DNA from: Podarcis muralis
Lineage: Eukaryota
Reading direction: 5' to 3'
DNA: 64,000 nucleotides
NCBI RefSeq assembly: GCF_964188315.1
Contig: NC_135656.1
Span: forward strand, 67,022,001 to 67,086,000
The notes under the pieces are model-generated. The model was not told where the DNA came from and searched no databases. It worked only from the letters and a program-made list of their open reading frames with translations. This document shows, one piece after another, positions 7,132 to 62,550 of the stretch; position 1 is the stretch's first letter; every line of letters starts with the position of its first letter. The position numbers and the translations under genes were made by a program.

Positions 7132-9999
7132 TTAGTCGTCAAATTTTCTGCAGTCTCCAAGGTTCCTCAGTCTAAGACGTCTTCTACTTTGTCTGATGCG
7201 GGAAAGACAATGCGAAGAACTCAGGATGAGAATTCAGAAGATGCAAGCTTCATTATTACTCATTAAACAGAAATAGTATTGGTGAGAAAGGTAAGTTCAT
7301 CATTGCTCTATTTCTCGGGGAAGGGAAATGGATGAGAAAGAATCCTGTCCAATAACCTGAAGAGATAGGGTTAAGTATAATTGCTTGATTCTACATTGAT
7401 TTAAAATAACTGCATGTGTATCCCTCAAGACATGGCATTGGAAGCTAAGAAAGAGCAACAGAATGCCTAACATTTAAATGATTAACTGAGAATGTATCTC
7501 TGCTACTCATCATGATCACATGGGGTATTCAATTGCAGATCTCCATTTTAGGTGTGTGAGTTGGTCTTTGTTTTTCTGAAAAAGGGCTGAAGAAATAGGA
7601 CCACTAATGACTCCCTGTCCAGGAGAAAATAGCCTCCAGGCTAATGGAGTCTGTGTGGAGAGAAAGAGCTTTGTTTCCAGCTCTGGGAAGAGTTATTTCA
7701 TATTTCTAAGATGTTAGGCCTGTGTTGGAACAAGCACATGATATTATGCGACTATTGGGTGTATCATTATTGTTTTGTGTCTGGTTTTGAACAAGTTCTG
7801 TTAGTAAAGCTTAAGAAACATATTTTTTGACTGGGCAAGGAAGACTGGGCAAGAAGAACCAGTTTTTATTCACCTATTGCTTCTAAAGAGCAATATTAAT
7901 AAACACAATAGCCGCTACCCATCAATCTAGACAATACTGAGCTGCATGGACCAGTGGCCTGACTCTGTATAAGGCAGATTCTTATGTTCATATGTTCTTT
8001 CCAGCACCACTGCTTGGTAAAACACCCCCATTTTCTAGCTTTCACTGTTCATCCATGTCAGAAGCTTCTGTAAGAGTATATGTTAAGACTTCTCACCAGA
8101 GCAATTCTGAGATCCACATTAGGGAAGCACCTAGTGTAAGCCTTTCCTACCTTCACAATAACTTTCTTATTACCCCCTAATTCCCTGATGGACCTTTGTG
8201 TTATTTTTCTTATGGGCCAACCTTACTACCTTTTGTGTCGTGATAGGCATGGTGGGGCACTTCAACACGATTACCCTTCTGACAGGGGCATCTCTGCTCC
8301 TTGGGGGTGGGGAAAGAGAGTGGTGAGGAGGTTGGTGGACTTGTAAAAGGGTAAAAGAGTATTGGGAAATGATCCATAATGAATTGGGGGGGGGGGATAT
8401 TTAAAAGTACCCCAACCCCCCCGAGTCCTTTCTGTTGGGGATGATTCAGAATGATATTCCCAGGTGTCAAAAAATGTTATTTATGTATGCTACTACTGCA
8501 GCCTGTGCTTTGTTAGCCCAAAAATGGAAAACAAGCAATGTCCCAACCAAAGACGAATGGAAACTTAAGTTGACAGAATATGCACGGCTTGCAGACATTT
8601 CCACCTCATAAGCAAAACCTGTACTCACATATACGCATTGCAGAAGGCACACTTGTTGCCATATGACATGCCATCAGAGCCACAGTGGGGATTGAATTCC
8701 AGAGTGCACTGTGGTTTTGGATATCCTCGACAATATCTCTACAGAGAGAGTAAATTTTACAGTATTATCCATTTTCTGGCAAATCTCATGTGGTTGCTTT
8801 TACCAATCAGGTCTTAGTTGCACATCAGGTTTTTCTTCTTTTAAGAAATCACAAACACACCCGCCCCCAAAATGAAGAGTACTGATAAAATGGGACAGGG
8901 CCGCAGTCTTATTTTTGCACAAAGCAAATCTGCTGAACTCAAAGGCGTCCTGCAAACATTGCAACCAACTATGCTGTGGAAGGACTGGCAAGGAGAGAGG
9001 CAGTGCAAAAGCCATCTGTGTAAACTCCAATAAAGTAGTAGAAGAAGAAGAGTTTGGATTTGATATCCCGCCTTTCACTCCCTTTAAGGAGTCTCAAAGC
9101 GGCTAACATTCTACTTTCCCTTCCTCCCCCACAACTAACACTCTGTGAGGTGAGTGGGGCTGAGAGACTTCAAAGAAGTGTGACTAGACCATAGTCACCC
9201 AGCAGCTGCATGCGGAGGAGCGGAGAGGCGAACCCGGTTCACCAGATTATGAGTCCACTGCTCCCAACCACTACACCATGAATTTGTCTAATCCCTTTCA
9301 ATGCCATCAAGGGTGTGTGTGTGTGTGGCTATCACTGCCTCCCGTGGGAGCGAGTTATATAGTTTAACCATGAGCTGCAGGAAAAAGCAATATTACACAT
9401 CTTGACAGCAAGTTATTAGGATGTTCTGTAATAAGAATAAATGACTGCCACTCACCCGTTCAAAACGTGCTTCAGTGACAACGGCTAGAATGAAAACATA
9501 CAAAATGTAAAAATTCCAAAGCAAATCTACATGTTGAATAATAGTCCATTTGAGAACAAGATACCCTTAATGAGGAGGGGAAGGTGGAGGCTACAACCTC
9601 CCCTCCAACCAAACAAAGGCTTACTCAATGCCTGACTTGCTTCTCCATTTGAAAACATTTGAAAAATGAGATATATTTTATCTTACATTTCCTTTGTTCT
9701 CTTAAAAGTTTGTTTATAGTGAGGTTTGGCAATATGCAGCTGAATTTAAATGTCCCTGATCAGTTGATGGGAAGAGAATCAAATCAAATCAAACTAGCTA
9801 ATCAGTTGACGATACTAATAAAGAAAACCCATTCAACTCCTAGCTGAACTGAAGCCCATTCTGTTGCTTTCAGTAGGGTGATAGAGTAAATCTCACATGA
9901 CAAGATATTCTTTCTCGTTCCTACTGACTAATTTCATATAGAAGCTTCCTTGAGAATAGCTACATCTGAGCATTCACAAGAATATGTGAGGGTTCAACA

Positions 10000-10037
<38 letters not shown>

Positions 10038-10364
10038 TTGTTTGAGAGATGTGCTTCTCTGTTCCCATGTTCCTGTGTGTGACAACAATGCTTCCTTCTT
10101 CCACAAGCTTTCACAAATGAAGCACTTAGGCTTTCAGGGAGATTTTATCAGATTCAGTTGACCACCTAATAAGAGCCTTCATATAGTTTTTGGAACACCT
10201 GGACAATTCATGGATTTTGGGTTCCTTTCTGAGATGGAGTATCTAATGGAACATTTGTAGAAATATCTTTTCCCCAAAGGGAACCTTTGTAATGTGAAAT
10301 ACGACTCACCTGAGTACAAAAAGAAGAACATCAGAGTGAGGAGGAGAAAACTGCCTGGCTTCAT
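7132..10364 (-). CDS. K1: secreted single-domain Kazal-type serine protease inhibitor (SPINK family), intact, P1=Leu
   Basis: Exons 10364-10310, 9484-9456, 8738-8629, 7192-7132, all GT-AG, phases 1/0/2. Protein: [84 protein letters not shown]. Six Kazal cysteines; AATAAA ~140 nt after the stop. Confidence 0.9.
9040..9278 (-). mobile_element. Squam3-type tRNA-derived SINE in K1 intron 2
   Basis: Minus strand starts TGGTGTAGTGGTT (A box), contains GGGTTCG (B box), and ends ...GGGATATCAAATCCAAACTC(TTC)n. Confidence 0.75.
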
Positions 10365-11720: not shown

Positions 11721-11819
11721 AGCAAACAGCCACATGGTGGGGTAGAGAGGCTTGTGACCAAATCCCCCCCCCCCCCCGGCAGCTTATCTTCCAGTTTATG
11801 TTTGTGTCTTGCTATATGG

Positions 11820-12736: not shown

Positions 12737-12805
12737 ACAAGGAGGAGAGAAATCCCATTGCAATAACATTAATTAATAACATTAATAACATTAATTTTTG
12801 AATCA

Positions 12806-16041: not shown

Positions 16042-16049
16042 CATAAATA
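16042..16049 (+). promoter_or_regulatory. TATA-like box (CATAAATA) of the K2 type-A promoter
   Basis: About 107 nt upstream of the ATG. Present at the same position in K3, K5 and K7; K1, K4 and K6 have TATATA-type boxes at the homologous site. Confidence 0.5.
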
Positions 16050-16155: not shown

Positions 16156-19100
16156 ATGAAGCCAAGCAGCTTTCTCCTCCTCACTCTGATGGTCTTCTTT
16201 TTGTACTCAGGTAAGTCATATTTCATATTGCAAAATTTCTCTTTCTCGGAGAGTTGTAGGGACCAAAGAATCCATGGACTATTCATGTCTTTAGATGAGT
16301 GTAGGAAGGCTCCACCTGTGTTGACAAAACCCAGTTAAAATCTCCTTGCAAACCATGGTGTTCACTGTCTGAAAGCTTGCGGAAGGAGGGGACATTGTTG
16401 TTAAGCATAGGGACACTGGGGGCAGGGACACACATCCCCCCAAACACACACACACTTGAACCTTCCCACGTTCTTTTGGACACTGAAACATGTCTGTTCT
16501 CAAGGTTCCTCCTATATGAAATTATACATGCCAGGATGAACCAGAATGAATGCCTTCCTATGTGAGATTTACTCTATCAAATAAAGATACTCTACATCAG
16601 GGCTCTACATTGCACAAGGCGCCCACCACTATTCACACAATAGGAGCCTTTTTGAAAACTGAGGCTCGAAACACTAATGCCCCCTAAAGCTACCATGTAC
16701 TCTCCTTTCTTCATGGTCTCCACGTGGCTCTTGTGACATAAAAAGTGGACCTAGCCATGATTCTTAACATGCAAAGCACCACAGCCGGGCATTCAAGGGA
16801 TATCAACAAAACTGGGTCCCAGTTAGTTATGGACTAAACCAGTATATACAGTTATTTGTATTTAGTATAGTTAACTGAACCATTTCCCATTGATTTGATT
16901 GTCTTCCTATCCATGCTCAGTGGCATTTAAAGGAAATTGTATATTGCCAAGGCAAATTATAGATGCATTTTTAGGATAACATAGGATGTACAAGATACAA
17001 TGCATCTCACTTTTCAGTTCCTAGAAATAAATGTTATCAAATAGGCTATTATTCAACATATGGAATTTCTAAACAATTTTCACATTTTCTGTGTTTTGCA
17101 TCTAGATGTTGTTGTGAAAGCAACATGGAAAGCGGTAAGTGGAAATCATTTATTCCTATGAAAGAACATGGACGTAGCACGGAGTTAAGATAAGTGAATA
17201 TATTTTTCNNNNNNNNNNNNNNNNNNNNNNNNNNNNNNNNNNNNNNNNNNNNNNNNNNNNNNNNNNNNNNNNNNNNNNNNNNNNNNNNNNNNNNNNNNNN
17301 NNNNNNNNNNNNNNNNNNNNNNNNNNNNNNNNNNNNNNNNNNNNNNNNNNNNNNNTTTAAAATAAGGCAACAAAAAAACATCAACACAAATATAACATAC
17401 AAGAGCTGGGGTTTTCCCAGGATTTTACATCTCTAGTCCCACCCATTTTTTTTAAAAAAGTTGGTGGTATTATTATTAGTTCCAGTTGCTACCCACAATT
17501 TATAAGAAAGTCTCAGCTTGCGTTCTGTAGTAGCCAAGTGGCGTTATTCTGTTATTACTAGGCAGACCGCCCAACCTTGCAGGCATATTATTTAGCCACT
17601 GTCTTAAGAATCCAGTCACTCACTGTGTTTTTTTTAAAAAAGTATTTATTTGCAAAAACAACCATCAAATGTGTCTAGCATGAAACCCCTAGAGCTGCCC
17701 ACTCACAATTTGGCAGGATTAATCTTCTCTAAAGGGGCTACCATGTCTGCAAATTTTGTTTCGCAGCGTGAAACACTTTGTACCTGTTCTAACCCTGCAA
17801 TATTTTAAAGTTTAAACTGTCTTGCATGAAATCCCTGGCACCGATGATCTATAATTTGACAGGTTTAAGCCCCCGAAATGGGGCCTTACCATGTCACCAA
17901 ATCACATGCCCCTAGTGGGAACTTGGAATGAATAGAGAACAACATTATCACACAATTCCCTGCTTGCCAGGACAATAAATCAGCATTTCCTGTGCTTGAA
18001 TGCACACCTTAATACAACACGTGTTGAATTGTCATTTGCATTCCTCATCTTTGCCTCATTATTAATCATGTCATAATCAGAAAGACCTTGTAGTCCAAAG
18101 GTTAAGTGGGGAGGACCTTTAAAACTGTTGTGTCCTTCATCTTCAGAAATATTGCAAAGGGTATCCAAACCCAGCATGCACCCTGGAGTACCTGGCCCAC
18201 TGCGGTTCTGATGGCAAGACCTATGGCAACAGGTGTCTCTTCTGCAATGCATATATGTGAGTATATCAAAGAATCATGCAGTCGGAAGGGACCCCAAGAG
18301 TCATGTATTCCAACCTCCTGGAATGCAGGAATCCTTTCCCCCCCTGATACATCTTTGTTGGAAGTTAAAAAGTACATGATTATATTTTCACTAAGCATGG
18401 TGAGATATAAATAAACGAAATAAAAAGAAATTGAGAATCAGCACCCATGTAGAAGGGAAAGTCAAGCGGGGGACGGACCCCTCCCCTGGGCAGTGCAGGA
18501 ATCATTTTGCACAACGTGGCGTTCTAAGCCATGGCCCTGAGTTTTGTGTTGCTTATGAGGCCCAAAGGAACATGGTGAGCAGAGCTAATCTGTAGGTAGC
18601 CCTGAATTTGAAGATGGAGTGGCTTGGGAGGGCTATTCAAATGCACCACCCTCCTGACACTCTTGTTGCTGCTGCTAAGAGTGTTGGGGGGGCAGGGGAT
18701 ATATGCCCAGAAGGGCTCTATCTCCATCCCACCAGGCCAGACTCAACGCAAAAGGTAGTAGGGTTGGCCCAGAAGAAAAATAACCAAAAAAGCCATCAGG
18801 GAATTAGGGGATAAAGGTAAAGGGACCCCTGACCATTAGGTCCAGTCGTGACCGACTCTGGGGTTGTGGTGCTCATCTCGCTTTATTGGCTGAGGGAGCC
18901 GGCATACAGCTTCCGGGTCATGTGGCCAGCATGACTAAGCCACTTCTGGTGCACCAGAGCAGCACACGGAAACACCGTTTACCTTCCCGCCGGAGCGGTA
19001 CCTATTTATCTACTTGCACTGTGACGTGCTTTTGAGCTGCTAGGTTGGCAGGAGCTGGGACCGAGCAACGGGAGCTCACCCCATCGCACAGATTTGAACT

Positions 19101-19625
19101 GCTGACCTTCTGATCGGCAAGTCCTAGGCTCTGTGGTTTAACCCACAGCGTCACCAGCTTCCCACAATTAGGGGATAGTAAGAACATTATTATGAAGGCC
19201 TACATTACAAAGGCCTACACTAGGTGTTTCCTTAATGTTGATCTTGGAATTGCTCTTGGTAAAAGTCTGAACATTTGCTGCTAGAGAAGTTTGACACAGA
19301 TGTACGATGAAGGCGGGAGAAGGGAAATCTTCTACAAATGGTAGACCTGAAAAGAATATTGTTCCCTCTTGCTCTATATTGGCTAGGCTGACAGGAAGCT
19401 GTTTTCCCGGGTCTCAGACAGGATTCTTCCTCAGCCCTTTCCCGTCCCCAAGACACAGAGCAATGATGGCATAAGCTTTCCCATCTATATAGTATTTCTC
19501 TTTAAGGAGTTATCATGAAAGCTGCAACTTATGAATTCTCATATTTATTTACTTCTTTTTTTCTCATCAGCAAAAGTGGAAGCAAGCTGAAACTGAAATA
19601 CTTCGGAAAATGCAAAAAAGTTTAA
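16156..19625 (+). CDS. K2: secreted single-domain Kazal inhibitor (SPINK family), intact, P1=Leu, in the inverted block
   Basis: Exons 16156-16210, 17106-17134, 18147-18256, 19571-19625, all GT-AG. Protein (82 aa): [88 protein letters not shown] at 19776-19781. Confidence 0.92.
17209..17355. other. Assembly gap (147 N) in K2 intron 2
   Basis: Run of N; the homologous position in paralogs is a short CA/GA microsatellite region. Confidence 0.97.
18814..19165 (-). mobile_element. Sauria SINE in K2 intron 3
   Basis: Same family as 376-726. 12-bp TSD AATTAGGGGATA at 18802-18813 and 19166-19177. Confidence 0.9.
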
Positions 19626-35500: not shown

Positions 35501-35940
35501 GAGTACCTTTATTTGATAGAGTAAATCTCACATAGCAAGACATTCATTCTTGCTCTTCCCCCCATGTATAATTTCACATAGGAGGAACTTTGAGAACAGA
35601 CATGTTTCAGTGTTCAAAAGAATGAGAGAAAGGAGAGAAAGGTGTGTGTGTGTTGGGGAGATGTGTGTCCCTGTCCTTAGTGTCCCTATGATTGACCACA
35701 ATGTCCCCTCCTTCCTTTAGCTTTCAGACAGCGAACACCATGGTTTGCAAGGAGATTTTAACTGGATTTGGCCACCACAGGTGGAGCCTTCCTACACTCA
35801 TTTGAAGGCATGAATAGTCTATGGACTGTTTGGTCCCTACACCTCTCCAAGAAAGAGACATTTTGCAATATGAAATATGACTTACCTGAGTACAAAAAGA
35901 AGACCTTCAGAGTGAGGAGGAGAAAGCTGCCTGGCCTCAT
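32547..35940 (-). CDS. K4: secreted single-domain Kazal inhibitor (SPINK family), intact, P1=Phe
   Basis: Exons 35940-35886, 34996-34968, 34068-33959, 32601-32547, all GT-AG. Protein: [86 protein letters not shown] at 36041-36052. Confidence 0.9.
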
Positions 35941-48500: not shown

Positions 48501-49527
48501 TCCTCTTAAGATGGAATGGAATATTCTAACAGATGGGCCATTTGGGCCTATTTCCCCTCCCCACCCCCCTGGATCACTCTTAGCAGCAGCAACAAGAGTG
48601 TCAGGAGGGTGGTGCATGTGAATAGCCCTCCCAAGCCACTTCATCTTCAAATTCAGGGCTACCTACAGATTAGCTCTGCTCACCATATTCCTTTGGGCCT
48701 CATAAACAAGACAAAACTCAGGGCCATGGGCTAGAACCCCACATTGTGCAAAATGATTCCAGCACTGCCCGGGGGGGGGGGTGTCCCCCGCTTGACTTTC
48801 CCTTCTACATGGGTGCTGATTCTCAATTTCTTTTTATTTCATTTATTTACATCTCACCATGCTTAGTGAAAATATAATCATGTACTTTTTAACTTCCAAC
48901 AAAGATGTCTGAGAGGGAAAAAAAGATTCCTGCACTCCAGGAGGTTGGACTACATGACTCTCGGGGTCCCTTTAGACTGCATGATTCTATGATATACTCA
49001 CAAATATGCATTGCAGAAGTCACACTGGTTGCCATAGGTCTCGCCATCAGAACCGCAGTGGGGACGTTTCTCAAAGATGCATGCTGGGTTTGGATGCCCT
49101 TTGCAATATTCCTGAAGATGAAGGACACAACACTTTTAGAGGTCCTCCCCACTTAACCTTTGGACTGCAAGGCCTTTCTGATTATGACATGCCTAAGAAA
49201 GAGGCACAAATGAGGAATACACCAAGTGTTATATTCAGTTATGCATTCAAGCACAGGAAATGCTGATTCATCGTCCTGGCAAGCAGGGAATTGTGTGATA
49301 ATGTTGTTCTCTATTCATCCCAAGTTCCCTCTTGGGGCATGTGATTCGGTGACATGGTAAGGCCCCATTGTGGGTGCTTAAACTTGTCAAATTATAGATT
49401 GTCGGTGCCAGGGATTTCATGCAAGACACCTTTAAAGTTTAAAATACTGCAGGGTTAGAACAGGGACAAAGTTTTTCACACTGCCAAACAAAATTTGCAG
49501 ACATGGTAGCTCCTTCAGGGAAGATTA

Positions 49528-49913
49528 CCATATTTTTCGTCCCATAGGACGCACTGGCCCATAGGACGCACCTAGTTTTTGGGGGGGGAAAGAAAGGGGG
49601 GGAAATTCCCTTTATTTCCCCCCCAAAACCAGTTCGGAGAATCCAAACCAGGTGGGGGACCAGCGGGATGGCGGCGCTGCGCCTCCCCGCTGTCCCCTGA
49701 GCTTGTGGGGCTGCCTGATGTCTGCCCGAAGTGCGGGGCGCTCTGCTTCAGCGCTCCCCACGCTCCATGCAGCAGGCTGCTATCCACAGCCTAGGGAGCC
49801 CTGTGGGAACTCCAAGCTTCAGCGAAAGCCTGCATTCGCCCCATAGGACGCACACAGATTTCCCCTTCATTTTTGGAGGGGAAAAATTGCATCCTATAGG
49901 GTGAAAAATACGG
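49528..49913. mobile_element. Tc1/mariner-superfamily MITE in K6 intron 2
   Basis: Imperfect ~26-bp TIRs (CCATATTTTTCGTCCCATAGGACGCA / TGCATCCTATAGGGTGAAAAATACGG), TA duplication, and absent from paralogs (GATTAATCCTG). Confidence 0.88.
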
Positions 49914-50788
49914 TAATCCTGCCAGATTATGAGTGGGCAGCTCCAGGGGTTTCATGCTAGACACATTTAACAGTTGTTTTTGCAAATAAATGCTTAAAAA
50001 AAAAAACACACAGTGTGTGCCTGGATTCATAAGACAGTGGCTAAATAATATGCCTGCAAGGTTGGGCGGTCTGTCTAGTAATAACAGAATAACCCCAGTA
50101 GGCTACTACAGAACACAAGGTGAGACATTCTTACAAATTGTGGGTAGCAACTGGAACTAATAATAATTCCACCGCCTTTTTTTTAAAAAAGGGATGGGAC
50201 TAGAGATGTGAAATCATGGGGGAAATCCAGCACTTGTATGTTTTATTTGTGTTGATGTGTTTTTGTTGTCTGTATTATAAATTCTATTTTAAAAATTCAC
50301 ACACACACACACACAAAATAATTTAAAATTCCACAAGAAATATATTTCACTTATCTTAACTCCATGCTACTTCCATGTTCTATCATAAGAATAAATGATT
50401 TCCCACTTATCGCTTCCCATGTTGCTTTCACAACAACATCTAGATGCAAAACATAGATAATGTGAAAATGATTTAGCAAATCCATATGTTGAATAATAGT
50501 CCATTTGATAACATTTATTTCTAGTAACCGAAAAATGGGATGCACTGTATCTTGTACATCCTATGTTATCCTAAAAGTGCCTTGGCAATATGCAATTTCC
50601 TTTAAATGTCACTGAGCATGGATAGGAAGACAAGCAAATCAATGGGAAATGGTTCAGTCTGTTAACTATAATAATTACAAATAACTGTATATACTGGTTT
50701 AGTCCATATCTAACTGGGACCCAGTTCTGTTGATTTCCCTTGAATGCCTGGCTGTGGTGCTTTGTGTGTTTATCATCATGGCTAGGTC

Positions 50789-52887
50789 GACTTCCGGGGT
50801 GGCGCCTCCGGCAATGGCGGACTCCCTCTGAAACGGAGGGACAAGCTCCGCACGAAACGGGTCTTTCCCGCTACGGCGAAGCGGGGACTCTTTAGAAATC
50901 ACAGGCGGATGAAGCCTGTGACCCTGGGACTCGGCGGGCACCCTTAGTGCCCCCCCAACCCGCAAAGGAGCTCAATAACGGGCCCCGAAGCGAAGAGGAG
51001 GAAGTGGTGTGGTGCTGAGAGTCTACCGCTATTTCCGTGGAGCGAAGCCACACAGCCGTTGCCGGAGAGCGCTGCCTTCTTCTTGGACAATTTGGACTTT
51101 AAAAACAACCACTGTGAGTACCTAAACTCGGGAAAATCGAACCACAATTTAAGGAACTGGGAAAAGAAAGGAATTGGACTCAAAAAGGCACTACAATTCT
51201 GTACTGAAACGGGAAGGTCTAACAGGAAGTCAACCTTCCTTTTTTTGTAGTCTGAACAAAGCAAAGACAAAGTAAACTAGAGTTTTGAAAACTATTTTAA
51301 AGGAGTGGATTTCATCATCTAAAATAGCATCATCTAAAATAGCTGAACCCCCCCTTCGGCAGCAGGAGAAGAAGGGGGTGCTTTCTTTGGACTGTTTTAT
51401 CCTGCAGAAGTAAGTTTAAAATAAAGTAATTTTCTGCCGTCCTGACCCAGGGAGCGGGGTGTCAGGACTGACGTTTGAAGCTCATTGACCACGACAGAAG
51501 CTGTTTGACAGATAGCTAAAAGAAGAAAAAAAGCTGCGATTCCACTGTTTCTTTTTGTAACTTTAAACTAACAACGATTGACAAAGTATTTAAAAGTAAA
51601 AGAAACTTTGGGGCTGGATTTGTAACAGAAGTTTTCCCTCTAGGGGGAGATAGTGAAACTGTAACTAGGGATTTCCCAGCCGTTACAGTATAACCTGTGG
51701 GAATTGAATGGTGACCTTGAAGGACAATGTACTCAGAAATGTTGTTGTGCGCTTTTCTCAAAACAAATGCTCTACTGGAAGAATTTCATGAGGGAATGAA
51801 TTTGATGACTGACTTGGTTGGGAACCTTAAGCAGACTGTGGGAAATCTTGGACAGGCAGTAGAAAAAGGTATGGAGTTTACCCAGGATTTATACCAAGAT
51901 TGTGCCTTATTAGAACAGAAGAAAGAAGAGGATTCTGCTGAACCTGGGGAGTCAGAAATGGAGCCACAGACGGAGGTTGCGGCCCTGCAGGAACATGAAT
52001 CTTTGGAATTGGCAACTGGCTTTCGAAAAAATCAGACTCGGAAAGAAGAAGTTTGGATCGAACTGGAAATTGGGGTTGGATGGACCCCCCTGAGCAGGGA
52101 CATATGGACTTTCCGAGTCTGGTAGTGGACTGTGAGAGGTTTGGAGATATGGGGATTCCAAAGTCTGGAGGGGCTTTGAAACATGCTTTTAAGTACTACA
52201 TGGAGCTCAGTTTGGACTGTGGAAAAGGGACCTTTTGGTTGGAAGGAGGCAAAAGCATTATTAAATTGGAGATTACACGAGTGAAAAGAAAATATGAAGA
52301 AAAACAGTGGAAGGGATGTGGAAGAGATTTAAGAGCCTCGGATATTAGGTCATCAGGTTAATGTGCCAGTTTAATGGACAAATGGACTGACGAACCCGGG
52401 ACCTGGGGGATGGGACGTTGGATGAAGATTTTCTCTTTTTTCTTCCTATTTTTTGTTATTAGGATTATTCTACATAATTGATGAATACTAGATGGATGGA
52501 TGAAATGAAATTGCTTGGCTCTGGTATAAAAGTTTAAGGGATTAGGAAAGAATATAATGGTTAAGAGAAGTTACTAAAAATAAGATTTAGGTTAAGGTTT
52601 TTATAGGACAATGAGGAGAATAGAGTAAGGTAATGTAATGAAAGATTAGAATAGGGTAAAAACTTGAAGGTAAGGATTTGCTGAACTGACAAATTGAACT
52701 GGAATACAAAAAAGGGAGGTTTGAGGAGGTCTGGGAAAATAAGTGTATGGAAGATATGTTATGAAAATTAATGTGTTTTTAACTGTTTTTATTTTGTATG
52801 TTTTTCTTTTTTGTATTTTCTTTTTTTTTCACTTTTCTTGTTATAACTTGGAAAACTCTAATAAAATATCTTTAAAAAAAATATAGA
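50789..52887 (+). mobile_element. 2.1-kb non-autonomous L1-like retroposon in K6 intron 1
   Basis: 14-bp TSD ATCATGGCTAGGTC at 50775-50788 and 52888-52901. CpG-rich 5' end (GACTTCCGGGG...AATGGCGG), short coiled-coil-like ORF 51727-52125, T-rich 3' UTR, AATAAA and A-tail; no EN or RT motifs seen. Confidence 0.7.
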
Positions 52888-55669
52888 ATCATGGCTAGGT
52901 CCACTTTTTATGTCACAAAAGCCACGTGGAGACCATGAAGAAAGGAGGGTACATGGTAGCTTCAGGGGGCATTAATATCTCAAGCCTCCATTTTCAAAAA
53001 GGCTCCTATTGTGTGAATAGTGGTGGGTGCCTTGAGAAATGTAGAGCCTTGATGTAGAGTATCTTTATTTGATAGAGTAAATCTCACATAGGAAGACATT
53101 CATTCTGGCTCTTCCTGCCATGTATCATTTCATATAGGAGGAACTTGGAGAACAGACAGGTTTCAGTGTTCAAAAGAATGAGAGAAAGGAGAGAAAGGTG
53201 TGTGTGTGTTGGGGAGATGTGTGTCCCTGTCCTTCATGTCCCTATGTTTGACCACAATGTTTGACCTCCTTCCTTTCACTTTCAGACAGCGAACACCATT
53301 GTTTGCAAGGAGATTTTAACTGGATTTAGCCACCACAGGTGGAGCCTTCCTACACTCATTTGAAGGCATGAATAGTCTATGGACTGTTTGGTCCCTACAC
53401 CTCTCTGAGAAAGAGACATTTTGCAATATGAAATATGACTTATCTTAGTACAAAAAGAAGACCGTCAGAGTGAGGAGGAGAAAGCTGCCTGGCTTCATGA
53501 TGATGCTGGTGAGTTTAGTTCTGTCTGCCGCTTAGTGTTTTTCCAAGCAGTAGATGCTTCTCAGATTTCACTGGCTGCAGTGAGGTCTGGACTCCTTCCC
53601 TAAATATATAGACATCATTGTGGCACCAATGATGAAATCTCCCAGTCTCAAGAAATATTTATATGTGTAAATAGGACATTACAGAGGGCAGCAATGTAAT
53701 ATACCATGCATAACAGTTCCCTTCCTCTGCAGACACTAGGGACATGCAAGAGATATATGGTAACCAGTAGCTTAGGAAGTTGCATGCAAAGTAGCTTGTC
53801 TTGACAATAAGCCAAAACAAGGCTGAAAAAAAGACTCCAGTGATAAATTGCATGTCATATAGTATTTGCCAAAAAATAATTTATTACATGTACTCCTAGC
53901 CAACACTGATTTCAGATATAAATATTACGGGGGTGGGGAGTTTAGAGGTAGCTATCAGGAAAACCCATGGAAAGAGCCTTACTGGTTCAACATGTAAGCT
54001 ATAAAATAAAAGAGGTATTGTAAAGGTTGTCCAAGAAAGCAATACAAATACGTTATATACGTCAAACGCACCAATTATCTTTAATTATTTGAAAACCACA
54101 GAAGTGTTGCTACCACTTGGCAGAGAAATGGGCAGGCACTCGACTTTGGTAACAATATTCATTATATGTGGTTTGGAAAGATCTTGATACTTCTAAAAAG
54201 AAGGATGATGCAACCATCATTCAGCAAAACTATAAAACTAAGGAGTCGCACCTACAATTGTGAGGCATTAATTCTGTCTCATCTCCTTCCTAACCACCGC
54301 AGCATCTCTCTCCAACCCTTATGCCTTTGCTTATTAGCCACCCATGTATAGTCCACACCAACATCCCCTCTCTATTCACCAGACCAGCAGTTCTCTGCCC
54401 AATTTCCCTTATATGTTTGTATGTGTTTTACATGATAGATCTTGGCCAATAATGGAAACAAGAAGCTGGCAGGAGAAAGTCTGGACCTTGGGTTCAGAGA
54501 GTTTGGAGGTTTCCAAATCTTGGCAGAGCTATGTCCCACTTTTTCCCTCAGAGGCACTTCTCCTGATCCTAAGCATTAAGCCTTATAAAGTAAGGATTCT
54601 CTTTCAAGGAAGAGCGAATAGGATAGAAGCCTGACACTTTATCAGATGTTTGCACAACATGTGGGTACTTCCTGCCATTCCCTGCCATAAGTGTATATTC
54701 TGATGAGCAGTTGAGTTGCCTTCTAGTGGAAAAGGCTGAAGGATGGACACTATTTTCTCTGCTCTGTTGAGATTTCCTTGTGGAACAATACCTGTGAAAG
54801 TGAGGAGCTCTTCTGCCTTTCTCTCTCACAAAAACAAGATGGCTGCTGCATCTCAGAGATGAATGAACTTGGCAACTGGGCATATGCAGAACAGGATGAT
54901 GGATCTGGTGGGCCATTGGCCTGATCCAGCAGCTGCTTCTTATGTTCCCCTTGGGCAGCAGAACCTTCTCCCCTTCTCTCCTCCTCCTCCTCCTCCTCCT
55001 CCTCTTCCTCCTCCTCTGCATAGCCTAACCTGGCCTAGGGATTTCCAAAATCCAGCAGAGCCACATAGGCGACACAGTGGGACAGCAAGGTGGGGAAAGC
55101 AAGGAGGAGAGAAATCCCATTGCATTAACATTATTTCTTCTGCTGGCGCAATGTTGTAGCTGGGTACCCACTTGAATGGCATATATCAATTCATATGATG
55201 GCAACTGAATTTTCAATGTGTACTTTTCTCTTATTTCTCTGTTTTTTCCCCCTATTAAAAATCAATAGAAAAGAAAAGAAATGTATTATAGCAGCGGGAT
55301 CGGTTTTTTTTAATCTGCAGAACTCAATTGCCAGAACTCAGAAATGTCATACTCAAAAGGGAGAAGATTCCACTGATTGTTTGACTCAGTTCCCTGATTG
55401 TGCGTTATTAGTAAGAAACTTCGACACCAATCTCTCGTCCAAATCATATAATAATTTTAAGAAAAGATAATACACCAATAAATGTATGGAGAGTTTGATA
55501 ATGTTCCTGAGCTTATTTATTGATAAACCAAATTAAGATGTTGCGAGATATTCACTGGCTCACAGAGGATAAGCAAAGAGAAGAATGGATTTGTTTTGTA
55601 GTGATGCAATGAGTGGAGCTTAAAAAGAAATGGGACTTCTTTTTTTGATGTTTCATAGTCTTGTGCATC

Positions 55670-56243
55670 TTAAGCTTTTTTGCATTCTCCATAGTATTTC
55701 AGTTTCAGCTTGCTTCCACTTTCGCTGATGAGAAAAAAAGAAGTAAATAAATATGAGAATTCGTAAGATGCAGCTTTCATTATAACTCTTTAAAGACAAA
55801 TACTATATAGGTGGGAAAGCTTATGCCATCATTGCTGACAGTCTTGGGGATGGGAAAGGGCTGAGGACAGATCCTGTCTGAGACCCTGAAAAACTGCATT
55901 CTGACAGCCTAGCCAATATTGAGCAAGAGGGACCAATGCCCTTTTCAGGTCTATCACTTTGTGGAAGATCCCCCTTCTCCAGCCTTCACTGTACATCTGT
56001 ATCAAACTTCTCTAGCGGTAAATATTCAGACATTTACCTAGAGCAATTCCAAGATCCACATTAAGGAAACACCTAGTGTAGGCCTTTGATACCTTCAGAA
56101 TAATGTTCTTATTATCCCCTGATTCCCTGAAGGGCTTTTGTTATATTTCTTCTGGGCCAACCCTACTACCTTTTGCGTTGAGTCTGGCCTGGTGGGATGG
56201 CGATAGAGCCCATTTCCCCTCCCGGTCCCCCTGGATCACTCTT

Positions 56244-56275
<32 letters not shown>

Positions 56276-59200
56276 GAGTTTCAGGAGGGTGGTGCATGTG
56301 AATAGCCCTCCCAACCCACTCCATCTTCAAATTCAGGGCTACCTACAGATTAGCTCTGCTCACCATGTTCCTTTGGGCCTCATAAGCAACACATAAATTA
56401 GGGCCAAGGGTTAGAATACCACATTGTGCAAAATGATTCCTGCACTGTCCAGGGGAGGGGTGTCCCCCCCCCCGCTTGACTTTCCCTTCCACATGGGTGC
56501 TGATTCTCTTTTTCTTTTCCGTTCTTTTATTTACATCTCACCATGCTTAGTGCAAATATAATCAAGTACTTTTTAACTTCCAACAAAGATGTATCAGGGG
56601 GGAAAGGATTCCTGCATTCCAGGAGGTTTGAATACATGACTCTTGGGGTCCCTTTAGACTGCATGATTCTTTGATATACTCACATATATGCATTGCAGAA
56701 GTCACACTTGTTGCCATTGGTCTTGCCATCAGAACCACAGTGGGGACGTTTCTCGAAGATGCATGCAGGGTTTGGATGCCCTTTGCAATATTCCTGAAGA
56801 CGAAGGACACAACAGTTTTAAAGGTCCTCCCCACTTAACCTTTGGACTGCAAGACCTTTCTGATTATGACATGCCTAAGAAAGAGGCAAAGATGAGGAAT
56901 GCAAATGACAATTCAACAAGTGTTATATTAAGGTGTGCATTAAAGCACAGGGAAATGCTGATTTATTGTCCTGGCAAGCAGGGAATTGTGTGATAATGTT
57001 GTTCTCTATTCATCCCAAGTTCCCACTTGGGGCAAGTGATTTGGTGACATGGTAAGGCCCCATTGCGGGGGCTTAAACCTGTCAAATTATAGCTCATCAG
57101 TGCCTGGGATTTCATGCAAAACACATTTAAAGTTTTGCATCAAGAAAGTACAACTTACAAAGGAGAACAATGCATCGCTCCCTATAAGGAAAAACATGCC
57201 TAAGGAAACCTCACCAGGCTTCTGGTCCAAAATGAGATACTTAGATGAAGCAGAATTAGGCTACAACCAGGTAGAATACCCCCAGGAGGAGGCCTTGTAT
57301 AGCAAAGGCCCAGTGTCTACCAATGTGAGTACTCTATATTTACCATCTGACACCATAGAACACCTGGGCAGTTCTCCATGTAAAGATGATCGTCGGCTGC
57401 CACGTAGAATGGTAAACTCCAACAGTACCTTGGAAGATAATTGACAAGGAGTGGTTCTTGGTAAAGCCAACCTTAGCTTTTTATCATGGAATATCGCAGG
57501 ATGGCAAAAAAGGCAGCTGACCCATCCTTTGCTAAATTTATCCAAGGCTACAACATAGTATTTTTACAGGAGACATGGCTCACAGGGGACCTAGAAGTTA
57601 ACGGCTTTTCCTCAATGTCCCTCACAGGATCCCCAAGCACTAAAGGGGGGAGAGTCAAGGGTGGCCTAGGCATTTTAATATCTACAAGGTTGAGGGTGTC
57701 CTTAGTAAAGTTAGAGACACTGAAACACCTGGCTATGGCCTTACTAGTGAAAAGTAGATTCTTCACCCTGCTACTGATTAATGTATATCTTCCCCCCCAA
57801 AGAGGCAAGCAGCTGATTAAAAACACCTGGCATGGGCTGGAAACATACATTGATGGTTTGATGACTCAAACCCCTGCAGCTTCAGTGCTAGTGGCTGGTG
57901 ATCTTAATGCCAGAATTGGCCAGTCTGACGAAGCACTATATGCACAATTCCACGACTCGCCACCCATCGTGGAAGAAAACCACCTTATACCCACTAGATT
58001 CTCAAAAGACAAGGGATGTAATTAAGCAGGTCTGTGCCTATTGCGTCTTTCTAACAAGCTGGACCTGGTCATACTAAATGGGCGCAAGAATGGGAAGACT
58101 TGTGGGGAATTTACTTTTATATCTAATGCAGGAGCTTCCACTATCGACTATGTTATGGTATCATTTAATCTCCTAAATAGAGCCCTTGAGTGCAAAGTGG
58201 AGGAGAGGGTTGATAGTGATCACTTACCGCTCTGCCTTCTCCTGGATGCAAGAAAAGACTTATTTTGCAACGATAAACTTGAAGACCCCAGGTCCTCCAA
58301 CATGGAGTTGAGATACTCACGTATTAGATGGTCCGAAAAGCTGAATGCCGAAACATCTGAAAGGCTATATTCGGACATATTCCTCATGAGAAGAGATAAT
58401 CTCTTAAACTCACCATGTTCTGAATCTAGAATAATCTTGTTCCTGGATCTGATCTCACTTTTGCAACCCCACCTGATTCAAAAAAAGACATCGCACCAAC
58501 CTTTATTCCCCAACAAATCCAAACCCTGGTTTGATCAGGAATGTATTGCTACAAAGCGTTCTTTGCTGGATAAGTACAGGAATTACAAATCAGCGAATTT
58601 ACTCTTGCTTCCTGCGGAATGGTTCAAAGCCAAACGTAAATATAAAGATCTGATTAAAAAGAAAAAGCTTCAGGCCCAAAGGGGGGAGTGGCAATGTTTA
58701 TTAGAGGCCTCTCGAAGGAAAGGCTCAGCCACTTTTTGGAAAATAGTCGTGAAAAGCTGGCAAGACTCCCTGATTGAAATTGATTATACTATACCAGTTG
58801 GGATTTGGGAGGCTTACTTTCTATCTTTATATACACCAAATCAACATCTGCAGGCCCTGCCCCCAGCTCCGAGTGATATTGGCGCCGAATGGCCCCCAGT
58901 ACCAACTGAAGAGATCTATAGGCTCATCCAATCCCTTAAACCTGGAAAAGCACCCGGCGTAGACAACATTACACCGGAACTCCTTAAGGCTAATGTTGAA
59001 TGGTGGGCCCCTGTGCTAGTTGCCCTATTTACCAGCATAGATCAATCGGCCACTATCCCTGAGGACTGGGGATTAGCAATCATCATCCCTTTATTCAAGA
59101 AAGGGAGCCGATCAGACCCGGCTAATTACAGGCCAATCAGCCTCCTAAGTATCATTAGCAAATTGTACGCTGCCCACTTATGCGACAAATTAGTGGACTG

Positions 59201-62200
59201 TTGGAACAAGACCACATTCTTTCAGAAGCACAGACTGGTTTTAGGGCAAATCGGTCAACCTTAGACCAAGACCTTGTTCTCCAACATCTTGCGGAGAAAT
59301 ATACATCAAGAGAAGGAGGTTCCCTATACGTGGCCTTTATAGATTTCAAATCTGCTTTTGATTTAATACCGAGGGACAGGCTTTGGGGAAAGCTAAGCAC
59401 CGCAAATATAAACAAACGTCTACTGTATCTCATCCACAGTCTTTATGAAAATACATGGATCCGGGTAAGGTGTGACCGACAGGGCCACCTATCCAAGGAA
59501 ATCCAAATCCATAAGGGGGTCAGGCAAGGGTGTGTCCTTGTGCCTACTTTATTTAACTTCTATATCAACTCGCTAGTAGGAAATATGGAAAAATAAAATG
59601 CCCATCCCCCCAAATTGGCTGGTACGCCCCTCCCGGTCCTTTTATATGCGGATGACACAGTTTTAATTTCCTTTTCTTGTGTTGGATTAAGAAAACTTTT
59701 GAGATCTCTTACCAAATACTGCAGCATCGAACAACTAACAATTAACTACAACAAATCCAAAGTCATGGTGTTCTCTAAAAAAAGGAGGAGGCACAAATGG
59801 AGAATAGACAATCGCTTAATAGAACAGGTTAATAGAACAGCTTAATAGAACCTTTAAATACCTGGGTGTAACCTTCCAGGAAAGGGGCTCCTGGTGCTTT
59901 CAGATTAATAATACTATTGCAAATGCAGAAAGATCTACCAAAGCGTTAATAAGATTCTTCTATGGGAAAGGGGGCCAACACATACCGGCAGCCTCCCAGG
60001 TCTTTGCTGCCAAAATACTATCACAATTGTTATATGGATCCCAGATCTGCAGCTTTAAAAACCTTACTCTCTTAGAGGCATTCCAAACTAAGTTTTTCCG
60101 CTGCTTGCTGGGGATCCCCTCTTGCGTATCCAACATAGCGGTCCGTTTGGAGGTTGGGCAAATTCCTATCGGTACTCAGATATGGATATTGAAGATCCAT
60201 TATTGGCTAAAGCTTATTTTCTTCCCGGTTGGGCTGGCACCTTTAACCTTATTAGATACCTGCCAATCCAAATGGAAAGCTACACTGCTGGAAAAGCTTA
60301 AAGGCTTGGGGATCTCACAGCAGACCCTGATAGCGATAGGCTTCGAGAAAGCTAGGACTACAATTCACCAGCGTATCTGGGATGTAGAATTACAATGCCA
60401 CATGAGCGAAATGATCAAACATCCAGCAATAAGGGACCATGGGAGAGGTTTCTCTCCAGCTAACTATCTGTCAGGTCTTCAGGTACCCAAATACAGACGG
60501 TCTTTTACCCTCGCTAGATTCAACGTTCTCCCTTCTGCCTTACTTCAGGGCAGATTTGAGGGTAAACCATACACAGCATGGGTCTGCCCTTGTGGCTCGT
60601 TGGAAGTTGAAACTGCTTCACATGTACTATTACGTTGTCGTCTTTATGAGGATATATGTTTGACTTTTATTACACCTATTTTGCAAAAGTCCAGGAAAGA
60701 ATCGGAACACCATAGTTTAAAACTACTGCTAGAGGACAAGAATCCCAAGACTACATTAAATGTAGCCAAATTCTGTGCGTCTGCAATTAATCACAGGAAG
60801 CAAGTGGTATCCCATAATGACCAAACCCCTAAATGTTAATTACAGGGGGCACACTAATAATTAATTATTTAATTTTGTTCTATTCATATTGTCCTCTGTA
60901 TTTCTGATTTTTTTTTTAATGATCTGTGATATTGTGTGTGTTGATGCTGGTCTGTGACCGTATTAATAAATTCATTCATTCATTTAAAGTTTAAATTATT
61001 CCACGGTTAGAACAGGTACAAATTTTTCAAACTGCGAAACAAAATTTGCAGACATGGTAGTCCCTACAGAGAGGATTAATCCTGCCAGATTGCGAGTGGG
61101 CAGCTCCAGGGGTTTCATGGTAGACACATTTAACGGTTGTTTTGCAAATAAATACTTTTAAAAAACACACAGTGAGTGCCTGGATTCATAAGACAGTGGC
61201 TAAATAATATGCCTGCTAGGTTGGGCGGTCTGTCTAGTAATAACAGAATAACCCCAGTAGGCTACTACAGAACACAAACAGAGACTTTCTTACAAATTGT
61301 GGGTAGCAACTGGAACAAACAATAATACTACCCACTTTTTTTTAAAAAAGGGGTGGGACTAGATATGTGTAATCATGCGAAAAACCCAGCTCTTGTATGT
61401 TATATTTGTGTCGATGTATTTTTGTTGCCTTATTTTAAATTCTGTTTTAAAAATTGACACACACACACACAGAGAGAGAGAATATTTTAAAATCCACAAG
61501 AAACATAAATTCACTTATCTTAACTCCACGCTACTTCCATGTTCTTTCATAAGAATAAATGATTTCCCACTTACCGCTTCCCATGTTGCTTTCACAACAT
61601 CTAGATGCAAAACACAGAAAATGTGAAAATTGTTTAGAAATTCCATATGTTGAATAATAGCCTATTTGATAACATTTATTTCTAGGAACTGAAAAGTGAG
61701 ATGCATTGTATCTTGTACATCCTATGTTATCCTAAAAATGCATCTATAATTTGCCTTGGCAATATACAATTTCCTTTAAATGCCACTGAGCATGGATAGG
61801 AAGACAATCAAATCAATGGGAAATGGTTCACTTAACTATACTAAATACAAATAACTGTATATACTGGTTTAGTCTATAACTAACTGGGACCCAGTTCTGT
61901 TGATATCCCTTGAATGCCCGGCTGTGGTGCTTTGCATGTTAAGAATCATGGCTAGGTCCACTTTCTTTGTCACAAGAGCCACGTGGGGACTATGAAGAAA
62001 GGAGAGTGCATGGTAGCTTTAGGGGGCATTAGTGTTTCGAGCCTCAGCTTTCAAAAAGGCTCCAATGGTGTGAATAGTGGTGGGCGCCTTGTGCAATGTA
62101 GAGCCTTGATGTACAGTATCTTTATTTGATAGAGTAAATCTCACATACGAAGACATTCATTCTGGCTCTTCCTGGCATGTATAATTTCATATAGGAGGAA

Positions 62201-62550
62201 CCTTGAGAACAGACATGTTTCAGTGTCCAAAAGAACGTGGGAAGGCTCAAGAGTGTGTGTTTTTTGGGGGGGATGTGTCCCTGCCCCCAGTGTCCCTGTG
62301 TTTGACCACAATGACCCCTCCTTCCGCAAGCTTTCATACAGTGAACACAATGGTTTGCAGGGAGATTTTAACTGGATTTTGTCAACACAGGTGGAGCCTT
62401 CCTACACTTGTCTGAAGACATGAATAGTCTATGGACTGTTTGGTCCCTACACCTCTCTGAGAAAGAGAAATTTTGCAATATGAAATATGACTTATCTGAG
62501 TACAAAAAGAAGACCATCAGAGTGAGGAGGAGAAAGCTGCTTGGCTTCAT
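55670..62550 (-). pseudogene. K7: Kazal inhibitor gene with broken exon-1 donor (probable pseudogene, P1=Phe)
   Basis: Exons 62550-62496 (donor GT>AT), 61600-61575 (3-nt deletion, in frame), 56793-56684, 55724-55670. Kazal part [54 protein letters not shown], with the conserved Tyr of KTY changed to Asn. Confidence 0.8.
57136..60980 (+). mobile_element. RTE-X-like LINE (APE-RT-C-terminal Cys/His motif), 5'-truncated and frameshifted, in K7 intron 2
   Basis: FLQETWL, AGDLNARIG, STIDY, SDHLPL, NYRPISLLS, FIDFKSAFD, GVRQGCVL, LLYADD, and CPCG..ETASHVLLRC. AATAAA plus (TTCA)n tail; 12-bp TSD CATTTAAAGTTT at 57124-57135 and 60981-60992. Clade assignment is from memory. Confidence 0.8.

What the first reader, a model, noticed from the sequence alone, without database searches (positions are those of the whole stretch)
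7132..62550. Seven-copy lineage-expanded cluster of small secreted Kazal (SPINK-like) inhibitors
Seen: seven copies of one 4-exon structure (signal peptide, short linker exon, and a Kazal domain split in phase 2), with all six cysteines and canonical splice sites in five copies. Established: this is the single-domain SPINK architecture; the motifs [16 protein letters not shown] and KSGGK resemble mammalian SPINK6, and CTLEY..CGSD.KTYGN resembles ovomucoid domain 3 (both recalled, not searched). Inference: a recent squamate-specific amplification under birth-and-death evolution, possibly serving skin or gland secretions, the oviduct or egg, semen, or antimicrobial defence. Such tiny-exon genes are often under-annotated. 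Whether the cluster is already described cannot be determined here.
Basis: partly seen in the sequence, partly recalled or inferred. Interest (0 to 1): 0.88.

Follow-up and report, generated by a model that had tools for sequence, protein, structure and literature searches.

The report
Tandem Kazal protease-inhibitor genes, wall lizard
The window holds a real tandem array of seven small secreted Kazal-type protease-inhibitor genes (five intact, two broken) in the common wall lizard, but the intact ones are already annotated as "ovomucoid-like" and behave like an ordinary fast-evolving inhibitor family.

Summary
Seven copies of a 4-exon single-Kazal gene lie between 7132 and 62550: a signal exon, a 29-nt linker exon, and a Kazal domain split after two bases of a codon. 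K1-K5 are intact. K6 has a stop codon and two dead donors. K7 has one dead donor and a Tyr-to-Asn change.

The window is Podarcis muralis OZ076955.1:67022001-67086000. K1-K5 are already called as genes there; four match RefSeq "ovomucoid-like" proteins exactly. All three K4 introns are confirmed by RNA contigs.

The N gap (17209-17355) lies inside intron 2 of K2. Its flanks are collinear with the other copies, so it raises no frame question.

All seven copies hit Pfam Kazal_1. K2 aligns without gaps to turkey ovomucoid third domain, and a K1 model superposes on it at 0.5-0.8 Å. Mammalian SPINK6 is the closest mammalian group.

The amplification is only partly recent. At least four lineages have orthologues in other lacertids, while extra units and gene content differ between Podarcis species and Zootoca. 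The reactive-site P1 varies (Leu, Glu, Phe). The cluster extends beyond both ends of the window.

Tissue and physiological role remain unknown. The array is real and tidy, but an ordinary new member of a known kind.

The parts
7132..10364 (-). K1, intact 84-codon gene. CDS exons 10310-10364, 9456-9484, 8629-8738, 7132-7192. P1 Leu.
   Evidence: Model. Identical to P0034 (XP_028576864.2, 'ovomucoid-like'). Called at this place. Kazal_1 42.9 bits. AF2 model has TM 0.88-0.93 to OMTKY3.
16156..19625 (+). K2, intact 82-codon gene and the only inverted copy. CDS exons 16156-16210, 17106-17134, 18147-18256, 19571-19625. P1 Leu.
   Evidence: Model. 100% identical to P0001 (XP_028576866.2). The P. raffonei orthologue is also on the strand opposite to its neighbours.
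17209..17355 (.). Assembly gap (N), inside intron 2 of K2. It lies 74 nt after exon 2 and 791 nt before exon 3.
   Evidence: The flanks are collinear with K4 and K7, which have 60-65 nt between the alignment ends. The letters were not filled or looked up.
26392..30707 (-). K3, intact 82-codon gene. CDS exons 30653-30707, 29766-29794, 27215-27324, 26392-26446. P1 Glu.
   Evidence: Model. Identical to P0032 (XP_077779602.1). The Zootoca orthologue P0006 also has Glu at P1 (support 100/99).
32547..35940 (-). K4, intact 82-codon gene. CDS exons 35886-35940, 34968-34996, 33959-34068, 32547-32601. P1 Phe. There is a Lys inside the signal-peptide core.
   Evidence: Model. All three introns are skipped in RNA contigs of runs X17, X18 and X19, and a 383-nt contig has no mismatch. 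Called as an 82-residue gene at exactly these limits.
38946..45560 (-). K5, intact 82-codon gene. CDS exons 45506-45560, 41357-41385, 40305-40414, 38946-39000. P1 Leu. Intron 1 is enlarged by a LINE.
   Evidence: Model. Identical to P0002 (XP_077780764.1). Called.
41575..44672 (+). LINE remnant (endonuclease and reverse-transcriptase ORFs), antisense in K5 intron 1.
   Evidence: Pfam Exo_endo_phos 1.7e-11 and RVT_1 5.9e-40.
47602..53498 (-). K6, pseudogene in this haplotype. Exons 53444-53498 (TAA at codon 18, donor AT), 50411-50439 (donor AT), 49002-49111, 47602-47656. P1 Phe.
   Evidence: No gene is called here. DNA contigs of two other individuals lie on it without mismatch in unique stretches.
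55670..62550 (-). K7, probable pseudogene. Exons 62496-62550 (donor AT), 61575-61600 (3-bp deletion), 56684-56793 (Tyr to Asn in TYGN), 55670-55724. P1 Phe. Intron 2 is enlarged by a LINE fragment (57.4-60.8 kb).
   Evidence: Kazal_1 is the weakest of the seven at 29.8 bits.

Best explanation
The window is the middle of the wall lizard's Kazal (SPINK/ovomucoid-type) locus. It holds a tandem array of small genes. Each encodes a signal peptide followed by one classical Kazal domain of about 50 residues.

Each product is most likely a secreted canonical ('standard mechanism') serine-protease inhibitor. Its exposed loop, Cys(P3)-P2-P1-P1', would bind the protease active site like a substrate, with the P1 side chain setting the target. 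On that reading Leu (K1, K2, K5) and Phe (K4) point to chymotrypsin-, elastase- or subtilisin-like enzymes. Glu (K3) points to a Glu-specific or otherwise unusual target. No copy in this window has the Lys or Arg expected of a trypsin inhibitor.

The array grew by unequal crossing-over of 6-9 kb units, with one inversion (K2). Exchange between units keeps the signal exon and parts of the introns alike. The mature peptide, and above all its enzyme-contact positions, diverges. Some copies (K6, K7) decay, which is birth-and-death evolution.

Shown here: gene structure, K4 splicing, Kazal membership, fold, orthology groups, pseudogenes and the pattern of divergence. Inferred: secretion, inhibitory activity, target classes and positive selection. 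Unknown: tissue and physiological role.
For: - Seven 4-exon copies, five of them intact.
- RNA contigs from three runs skip exactly the three predicted K4 introns.
- Every exon 3 scores above the Pfam Kazal_1 cut-off.
- K2 aligns without gaps to OMTKY3 with all six Cys, E 6e-18. The AF2 model of K1 (pLDDT 84.7) superposes on OMTKY3 complexes at 0.5-0.8 Å over 49 residues.
- The five intact genes are called in GCA_964188315.1, and four equal RefSeq 'ovomucoid-like' proteins.
- The units are 85-92% identical.
- The tree shows a lacertid clade holding K2-K7 (86/92), with K1, K3 and Phe-type orthologue groups starred, and snakes expanding separately.
- The signal exon differs at 0-4 of 54 nt, while the mature part has dN/dS of 0.4-1.8 among K2-K7.
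- Between K4 and K5 the coding sequence differs by 13.3% and intron 3 by 5.3%, Fisher p 2.5e-4.
- Contact positions are more variable than the rest across squamates, MWU p 0.005.
- P1 in squamate relatives spans L, F, M, K, E, R, A, D and H.
Against: - No activity, secretion or tissue data exist for any copy.
- K4 carries a Lys in its signal-peptide core.
- dN/dS rests on about 64 codons per pair, and dS in the exons also exceeds intron divergence. Gene conversion of introns could therefore mimic accelerated exon evolution.
- Within the window alone the contact-residue excess is not significant (p 0.08).
- The tree rests on 82 columns, and many forks are unresolved.
Confidence: 0.85

Rival explanations
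1. The copies are an assembly artefact: collapsed or duplicated haplotigs, or a mis-join at the N gap. The real locus would then hold fewer genes.
For: There is an N gap next to the only inverted copy. Tandem repeats of 85-92% identity are hard to assemble.
Against: - The units differ by 8-30%, far more than alleles would.
- Both flanks of the gap are inverted together and are collinear with the paralogues.
- Short-read contigs from 16 runs hold 49-76% of the sampled K4 words. Two of those runs, from different studies, lie on unique K6 stretches without mismatch.
- P. raffonei and Zootoca assemblies show comparable arrays, including an opposite-strand K2 orthologue in P. raffonei.
- An older P. 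muralis annotation has near-identical proteins.
Confidence: 0.03
2. The high similarity of the units reflects ongoing gene conversion among old paralogues (concerted evolution), not recent duplication. On this reading the array is old and stable in number.
For: - Identity is mosaic. The K3 exon-1 region is 97% identical to that of K5, while K3's exon 3+4 coding sequence and intron 3 differ from the other copies by 21-45%.
- Between K4 and K5, intron 3 is more alike than the exons.
- The K1, K3 and Phe-type groups have orthologues in Zootoca, and the Phe-type group also in Lacerta.
Against: - Zootoca has no further unit within 10 kb upstream of its Phe-type gene, whereas P. muralis has K5 only 3 kb upstream of K4.
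- P. raffonei carries Arg-P1 copies that are absent from this window.
- K6 and K7 are decaying.

Number and content therefore do change. Both processes probably act together.
Confidence: 0.35
3. The proteins keep the Kazal fold but no longer act mainly as protease inhibitors. They might serve as chemical signals, antimicrobial peptides or sperm/egg-coat ligands.
For: The variable surface and the lineage-specific turnover would also fit signalling or reproductive proteins. From general knowledge, some Kazal-fold proteins have non-inhibitory roles.
Against: The canonical loop is fully kept, including P3 Cys, P1' Glu and Asn33, as are the scaffold residues aligned with OMTKY3. Variation is concentrated at enzyme-contact positions, as in true inhibitors. 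No Kazal protein is mentioned in a lacertid femoral-gland proteome paper.
Confidence: 0.1

Closest known systems
Avian ovomucoid third domain (OMTKY3 / OMSVP3; MEROPS family I1, Pfam PF00050)
   Same: Gapless 49-50 residue alignment, about 55-60% identity, with the same six Cys and the same loop (K2 shares the Cys-Thr-Leu-Glu-Tyr stretch). The predicted fold superposes at 0.5-0.8 Å. Contact residues are hypervariable, as is known for ovomucoids (the ovomucoid comparison is from general knowledge).
   Different: Ovomucoid is one gene with three tandem Kazal domains, made for egg white. These are separate single-domain genes, each with its own signal peptide. A separate three-Kazal gene lies about 13 kb to the right of the window. 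The name 'ovomucoid-like' reflects similarity to domain 3 only.
Mammalian SPINK6 (and SPINK9), single-Kazal epidermal kallikrein inhibitors
   Same: Closest mammalian group in the profile search, at about 44-48% identity over 90% of the length, signal peptide included. Total length is the same at about 80 residues. The gene type is a single-domain SPINK gene with a signal exon and a split Kazal domain. SPINK6 has a solved structure among the matches.
   Different: SPINK6 is a single gene with Arg at P1 and 9 residues between the first two Cys. The lizard copies have 7 residues there and Leu, Phe or Glu at P1. One-to-one orthology is not established. Expression in skin is not shown for the lizard genes.
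Squamate 'ovomucoid-like' / snake 'Kazal-type inhibitor-like' genes
   Same: Same family and signal peptide. They are multi-copy in snakes (at least 5 each in Pituophis and Liasis), iguanians, geckos and others.
   Different: The snake copies form their own groups in the tree, so the lacertid K2-K7 clade is a separate expansion. Kazal-type proteins are mentioned in papers on Bothriechis snake venom, but nothing links the lizard genes to venom.

Membership tests
Kazal-type serine protease inhibitor domain (Pfam PF00050, MEROPS I1) | Six cysteines with classical spacing | tested here: met
   C-x7-C-x7-C-x10-C-x2-C-x17-C in all seven copies.
Kazal-type serine protease inhibitor domain (Pfam PF00050, MEROPS I1) | Profile match above the curated threshold | tested here: met
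   Exon 3 alone gives Kazal_1 at 29.8-49 bits against a cut-off of 21, for all seven copies.
Kazal-type serine protease inhibitor domain (Pfam PF00050, MEROPS I1) | Kazal fold (short helix packed on a small sheet, exposed binding loop) | tested here: met
   The K1 AF2 model has pLDDT 84.7. Its TM-score normalised to the target is 0.88-0.93 and its rmsd 0.5-0.8 Å to OMTKY3 chains. Only K1 was modelled.
Kazal-type serine protease inhibitor domain (Pfam PF00050, MEROPS I1) | Canonical reactive-site loop and supporting Asn33 | tested here: met
   The gapless alignment to OMTKY3 places P3 Cys, P1' Glu and Asn33, all invariant in the seven copies. P1 is L, L, E, F, L, F, F for K1 to K7.
Kazal-type serine protease inhibitor domain (Pfam PF00050, MEROPS I1) | Measured inhibition of a serine protease | not testable with these tools
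   Needs recombinant protein and enzyme assays.
Vertebrate single-domain SPINK genes (SPINK1/6/9 type) | Four-exon gene: signal exon, short exon, Kazal domain split by an intron | tested here: met
   Models. K4's three introns are confirmed by RNA contigs. The comparison with the mammalian gene plan is from general knowledge.
Vertebrate single-domain SPINK genes (SPINK1/6/9 type) | N-terminal secretion signal | tested here: inconclusive
   There is a hydrophobic N-terminus (Met-Lys-Pro, then a Leu/Phe-rich core) conserved across squamates. No signal-peptide predictor was available. K4 has a Lys in the core.
Vertebrate single-domain SPINK genes (SPINK1/6/9 type) | Orthology to a named mammalian SPINK | tested here: inconclusive
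   SPINK6 is the nearest mammalian group, but it served as the outgroup in the tree. Flanking non-Kazal genes were not examined.
Ovomucoid proper | Three tandem Kazal domains in one polypeptide | tested here: not met
   Each gene has one domain. A separate gene of at least 198 residues with three Kazal domains lies outside the window.

The most novel reading that the evidence does not exclude
The array could be a fast-turning inhibitor repertoire under diversifying selection, with functional-versus-pseudogene or copy-number polymorphism inside Podarcis muralis. K6 is dead in this haplotype. Yet RNA of another individual carries a spliced, well-covered K6-like transcript. DNA of one of two individuals shows its variants at partial depth. 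An older RefSeq build had an intact K6-like gene. Together with different P1 sets in sister species (Arg-type copies in P. raffonei, none here), this would make the locus a natural system for studying how protease-inhibitor specificity evolves in an arms race or in reproduction.
Probability: 0.3. Interest if true: 0.45.

Novelty: new member of a known kind. Interest (0 to 1): 0.3.

Why it matters
It matters modestly. The locus is a clean vertebrate example of a tandem inhibitor family in which the signal peptide is frozen while the enzyme-contact surface changes. P1 switches between Leu, Phe and Glu here, and to Met, Lys and Arg in close relatives. Gene content also differs between congeneric lizards. 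That could help studies of inhibitor specificity, host-pathogen or reproductive conflict, and gene conversion against selection. It does not reveal a new kind of gene or mechanism, and the genes are already in RefSeq.

Tried and rejected
- Searching for the 'KSGGK' motif found only K4, so exon 4 was located by DNA similarity instead.
- MAFFT global alignment of intron 3 inflates the distances for K2, which has a non-homologous insert. Only the K4-K7 intron figures are used.
- Seven full-text searches found no paper describing this lizard cluster: Kazal with Podarcis, ovomucoid-like with lizard, SPINK with squamate, tissue terms, ovomucoid with lacertids, snake venom, and SPINK6 with reptile. 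A femoral-gland proteome paper on Lacerta agilis does not mention Kazal or ovomucoid proteins.
- Tissue of expression could not be read because run and sample names are coded.
K6 was chosen for the second and last read-laying run.
- P0026 could not be located on a contig, so P0004 was used instead.
- The weak exon-1-like match at 14502-14543 was inspected and left as a probable relic or chance match.
- ORFs at 12992-13444, 23399-23830, 27368-27991, 44067-44672, 58041-59264 and 60027-60839 gave no Pfam family.
Full report
**What is there.** A six-frame motif scan and tblastn with three exon-3 peptides find exactly seven Kazal exon-3 copies, at 8628-8738, 18147-18257 (+ strand), 27214-27324, 33958-34068, 40304-40414, 49001-49111 and 56683-56793. 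Searches seeded with one copy recover seven copies each of exon 4, exon 1 and exon 2.

Each gene has four CDS exons:
- a 55-nt signal exon ending in phase 1;
- a 29-nt linker exon (26 nt in K7);
- a 110-nt exon with Cys 1-5 that ends after two bases of a codon;
- a last exon of 55-61 nt with Cys 6.

K1-K5 have open frames of 82-84 codons and GT..AG at every intron. K6 has TAA at codon 18 and AT instead of GT at two donors. K7 has AT at the exon-1 donor, a 3-bp in-frame deletion in exon 2, and Asn in place of the conserved Tyr of the TYGN motif.

**The gap.** The N run at 17209-17355 is the only one in the window. K2 exon 2 ends at 17134 and exon 3 starts at 18147, so the gap lies in intron 2 and raises no frame question. 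In the self-comparison, 15949-17208 matches K4 at 36146-34893, and 17356-18723 matches K4 at 34827-33484. K7 gives the same picture.

Both flanks are therefore inverted together and collinear with the paralogues, which have 60-65 nt between the alignment ends. The K2 model translates to a protein identical to XP_028576866.2, and an older build has a 98% identical version. In P. raffonei the K2 orthologue also lies on the strand opposite to its neighbours.

**Origin and annotation.** The window is Podarcis muralis GCA_964188315.1, OZ076955.1:67022001-67086000. The protein matches are:
- K1 = P0034 (XP_028576864.2)
- K2 = P0001 (XP_028576866.2)
- K3 = P0032 (XP_077779602.1)
- K5 = P0002 (XP_077780764.1)

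All four are named 'ovomucoid-like'. K4 is called as an 82-residue gene at exactly my limits. K6 is not called in the fetched interval; the K7 interval lay outside the loci fetched, so its annotation was not checked.

The cluster is larger than the window:
- An 87-residue Kazal gene starts about 0.9 kb left of position 1.
- To the right lie a three-Kazal gene at about window position 77-83 kb, a 79-residue gene (P0137) at about 87-90 kb, and an 89-residue gene at about 97-100 kb.

**Transcription.** RNA contigs from three runs skip 32602-33958, 34069-34967 and 34997-35885. These are the three K4 introns, with GT..AG ends on the - strand. A 383-nt contig has no mismatch.

Laid on K6, RNA run X18 shows a spliced transcript whose exon-3 part is identical to K6. 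Its exon 4 differs at 6 of 105 positions and starts with a Glu-Ser reading, like the old RefSeq protein P0030. Some of its variants appear at partial depth in DNA run X16 and not in X1. So an expressed K6-like allele or extra paralogue exists in other individuals, while K6 is dead in this haplotype.

**What the proteins are.** All seven exon-3 translations exceed the Pfam Kazal_1 cut-off. Against solved structures, K2 aligns without gaps over 49-50 residues to turkey and silver-pheasant ovomucoid third domains (E about 1e-17). SPINK6 and other Kazal inhibitors follow further down the list. An AlphaFold model of K1 (pLDDT 84.7) superposes on OMTKY3 chains at 0.5-0.8 Å, with target-normalised TM-scores of 0.88-0.93.

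Using OMTKY3 numbering, P1 (residue 18) is Leu in K1, K2 and K5, Glu in K3, and Phe in K4, K6 and K7. P3 Cys, P1' Glu and Asn33 are invariant.

By the standard mechanism of canonical inhibitors (established knowledge), these should be tight substrate-like inhibitors whose target is set largely by P1. That would make them chymotrypsin-, elastase- or subtilisin-type for Leu and Phe, and unusual for Glu. None in this window looks like a trypsin inhibitor. This functional step is inference.

**Relatives and history.** Profile and single-sequence searches find 79-89 residue 'ovomucoid-like' proteins throughout Squamata, including lacertids, iguanians, geckos, an amphisbaenian and many snakes, several per genome. 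Next come two-domain turtle proteins and mammalian SPINK6 at about 44-48% identity.

In a tree of 57 proteins (82 columns, many unresolved forks) four results stand out:
- K1 groups with P. raffonei and Zootoca proteins (100/98).
- K3 groups with a Zootoca protein that also has Glu at P1 (100/99).
- K4, K6 and K7 fall in a Phe-P1 group with P. raffonei, P. lilfordi, Lacerta and Zootoca proteins (99/94).
- K2-K7 lie with other lacertid proteins (plus one long-branched Pogona sequence) in a clade separate from the snake groups (86/92).

So at least four lineages predate the split of these lacertid genera, and the expansion is lacertid-level rather than simply recent.

Turnover is nevertheless visible. 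Zootoca has no further unit within 10 kb upstream of its Phe-type gene, whereas K5 lies 3 kb upstream of K4 here, and gene order differs. P. raffonei carries two copies with Arg at P1 that have no counterpart in this window.

**Pattern of divergence.** Units are 85-92% identical over kilobases, but identity is mosaic. The K3 exon-1 region is 97% identical to that of K5, while K3's exon 3+4 coding sequence and intron 3 differ from the other copies by 21-45%. That points to exchange between units.

The signal exon differs at 0-4 of 54 nt between copies, whereas the mature part has dN/dS of 0.4-1.8 among K2-K7. For K3 against K5 the contrast is 0/54 against 45/192 (Fisher p 5e-6). Between K4 and K5 the Kazal coding sequence differs by 13.3% and intron 3 by 5.3% (p 2.5e-4).

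Enzyme-contact positions have higher entropy than other non-Cys positions: 2.12 against 1.17 bits across 49 squamate sequences (p 0.005), 1.27 against 0.82 in lacertids (p 0.05), and 1.05 against 0.71 within the window (p 0.08). P1 across the squamate set spans nine residue types.

This is the classical picture for Kazal inhibitors. It fits diversifying selection, but the numbers are small, and conversion of introns is an alternative for part of it.

**Other content.** The long introns of K5 and K7 hold LINE fragments (endonuclease and reverse transcriptase) on the opposite strand. A weak exon-1-like stretch sits at 14502-14543.

**Artefact check.** The copies differ far more than alleles would. 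Independent short-read contigs of other individuals hold the K4 region and lie on unique K6 stretches without mismatch. Two other lacertid assemblies show comparable arrays.

**Literature.** Seven full-text searches found no description of this lizard cluster. A femoral-gland proteome paper on Lacerta agilis does not mention Kazal proteins (PMC9000839). Kazal-type proteins are mentioned in papers on Bothriechis snake venom, which has no shown bearing on the lizard genes.

**Verdict.** The array is a lineage-specific set of paralogues of a well-known family, so interest is moderate to low.

Noticed in passing
window 47602-53498 (K6): K6 is a pseudogene here. RNA run X18 holds a spliced K6-like transcript at depth 80-101, with the exon-3 part identical to K6 and an exon 4 that reads Glu-Ser at its start. 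Some of its variants (47623, 47624, 49073) occur at partial depth in DNA run X16 but not in X1. Old RefSeq proteins P0030 and P0031 look like the intact form. This could be a functional/pseudogene polymorphism or an extra paralogue.
   Followed up: partly
window 27215-27324 (K3): Glu at P1 is kept in the Zootoca orthologue P0006. A Cys-Thr-Glu-Glu-Tyr loop also occurs in snake paralogues (P0009, P0012, P0017). The acidic-P1 type is therefore either old or arose more than once.
   Followed up: partly
L005:12406-12516 and L005:24053-24163 (Podarcis raffonei): There are two Kazal exon-3 copies with Arg at P1 (a Cys-Thr-Arg-Glu-Leu loop) in the sister species' array. No such copy exists in this window.
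   Followed up: no
window 29753-31483 against 44682-46318 and 61562-63326: The K3 exon-1 region is 94-97% identical to those of K5, K7 and K2, although the rest of K3 is the most divergent unit after K1. This looks like a gene-conversion or recombination tract.
   Followed up: partly
window 35886-35940 (K4 exon 1): The K4 signal peptide has Arg at residue 2 and a Lys inside the hydrophobic core, where the other intact copies have Met and K6 has Thr. The gene is nevertheless transcribed and spliced.
   Followed up: no
outside the window, about 87.4-90.0 kb on the window scale (L003:10001-12555, P0137): In X18 and X19 a contig of depth up to 385 joins a K-type exon-1 end to a different exon 2, which reads Ala-Ala-Thr-Glu-Ala-Ile-Asn-Glu-Arg. 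That matches the P0013/P0137 gene type. This neighbour seems to be the most abundant transcript of the family in those runs.
   Followed up: partly
window 14502-14543 (-): A weak exon-1-like stretch lies between K1 and K2. It has a 5'UTR-like lead, an ATG and a short hydrophobic ORF. It is a possible relic of a lost unit or a chance match (39 bits).
   Followed up: partly
window 41575-44672 and 57486-60839 (+): LINE endonuclease and reverse-transcriptase ORF fragments lie antisense inside K5 intron 1 and K7 intron 2. They account for the long introns. A further RT fragment lies at 13793-14356.
   Followed up: yes
window 49550-49949 and 52550-52749: Word depth is extremely high in the DNA runs, up to 3e5. 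These are high-copy repeats inside the K6 introns.
   Followed up: no
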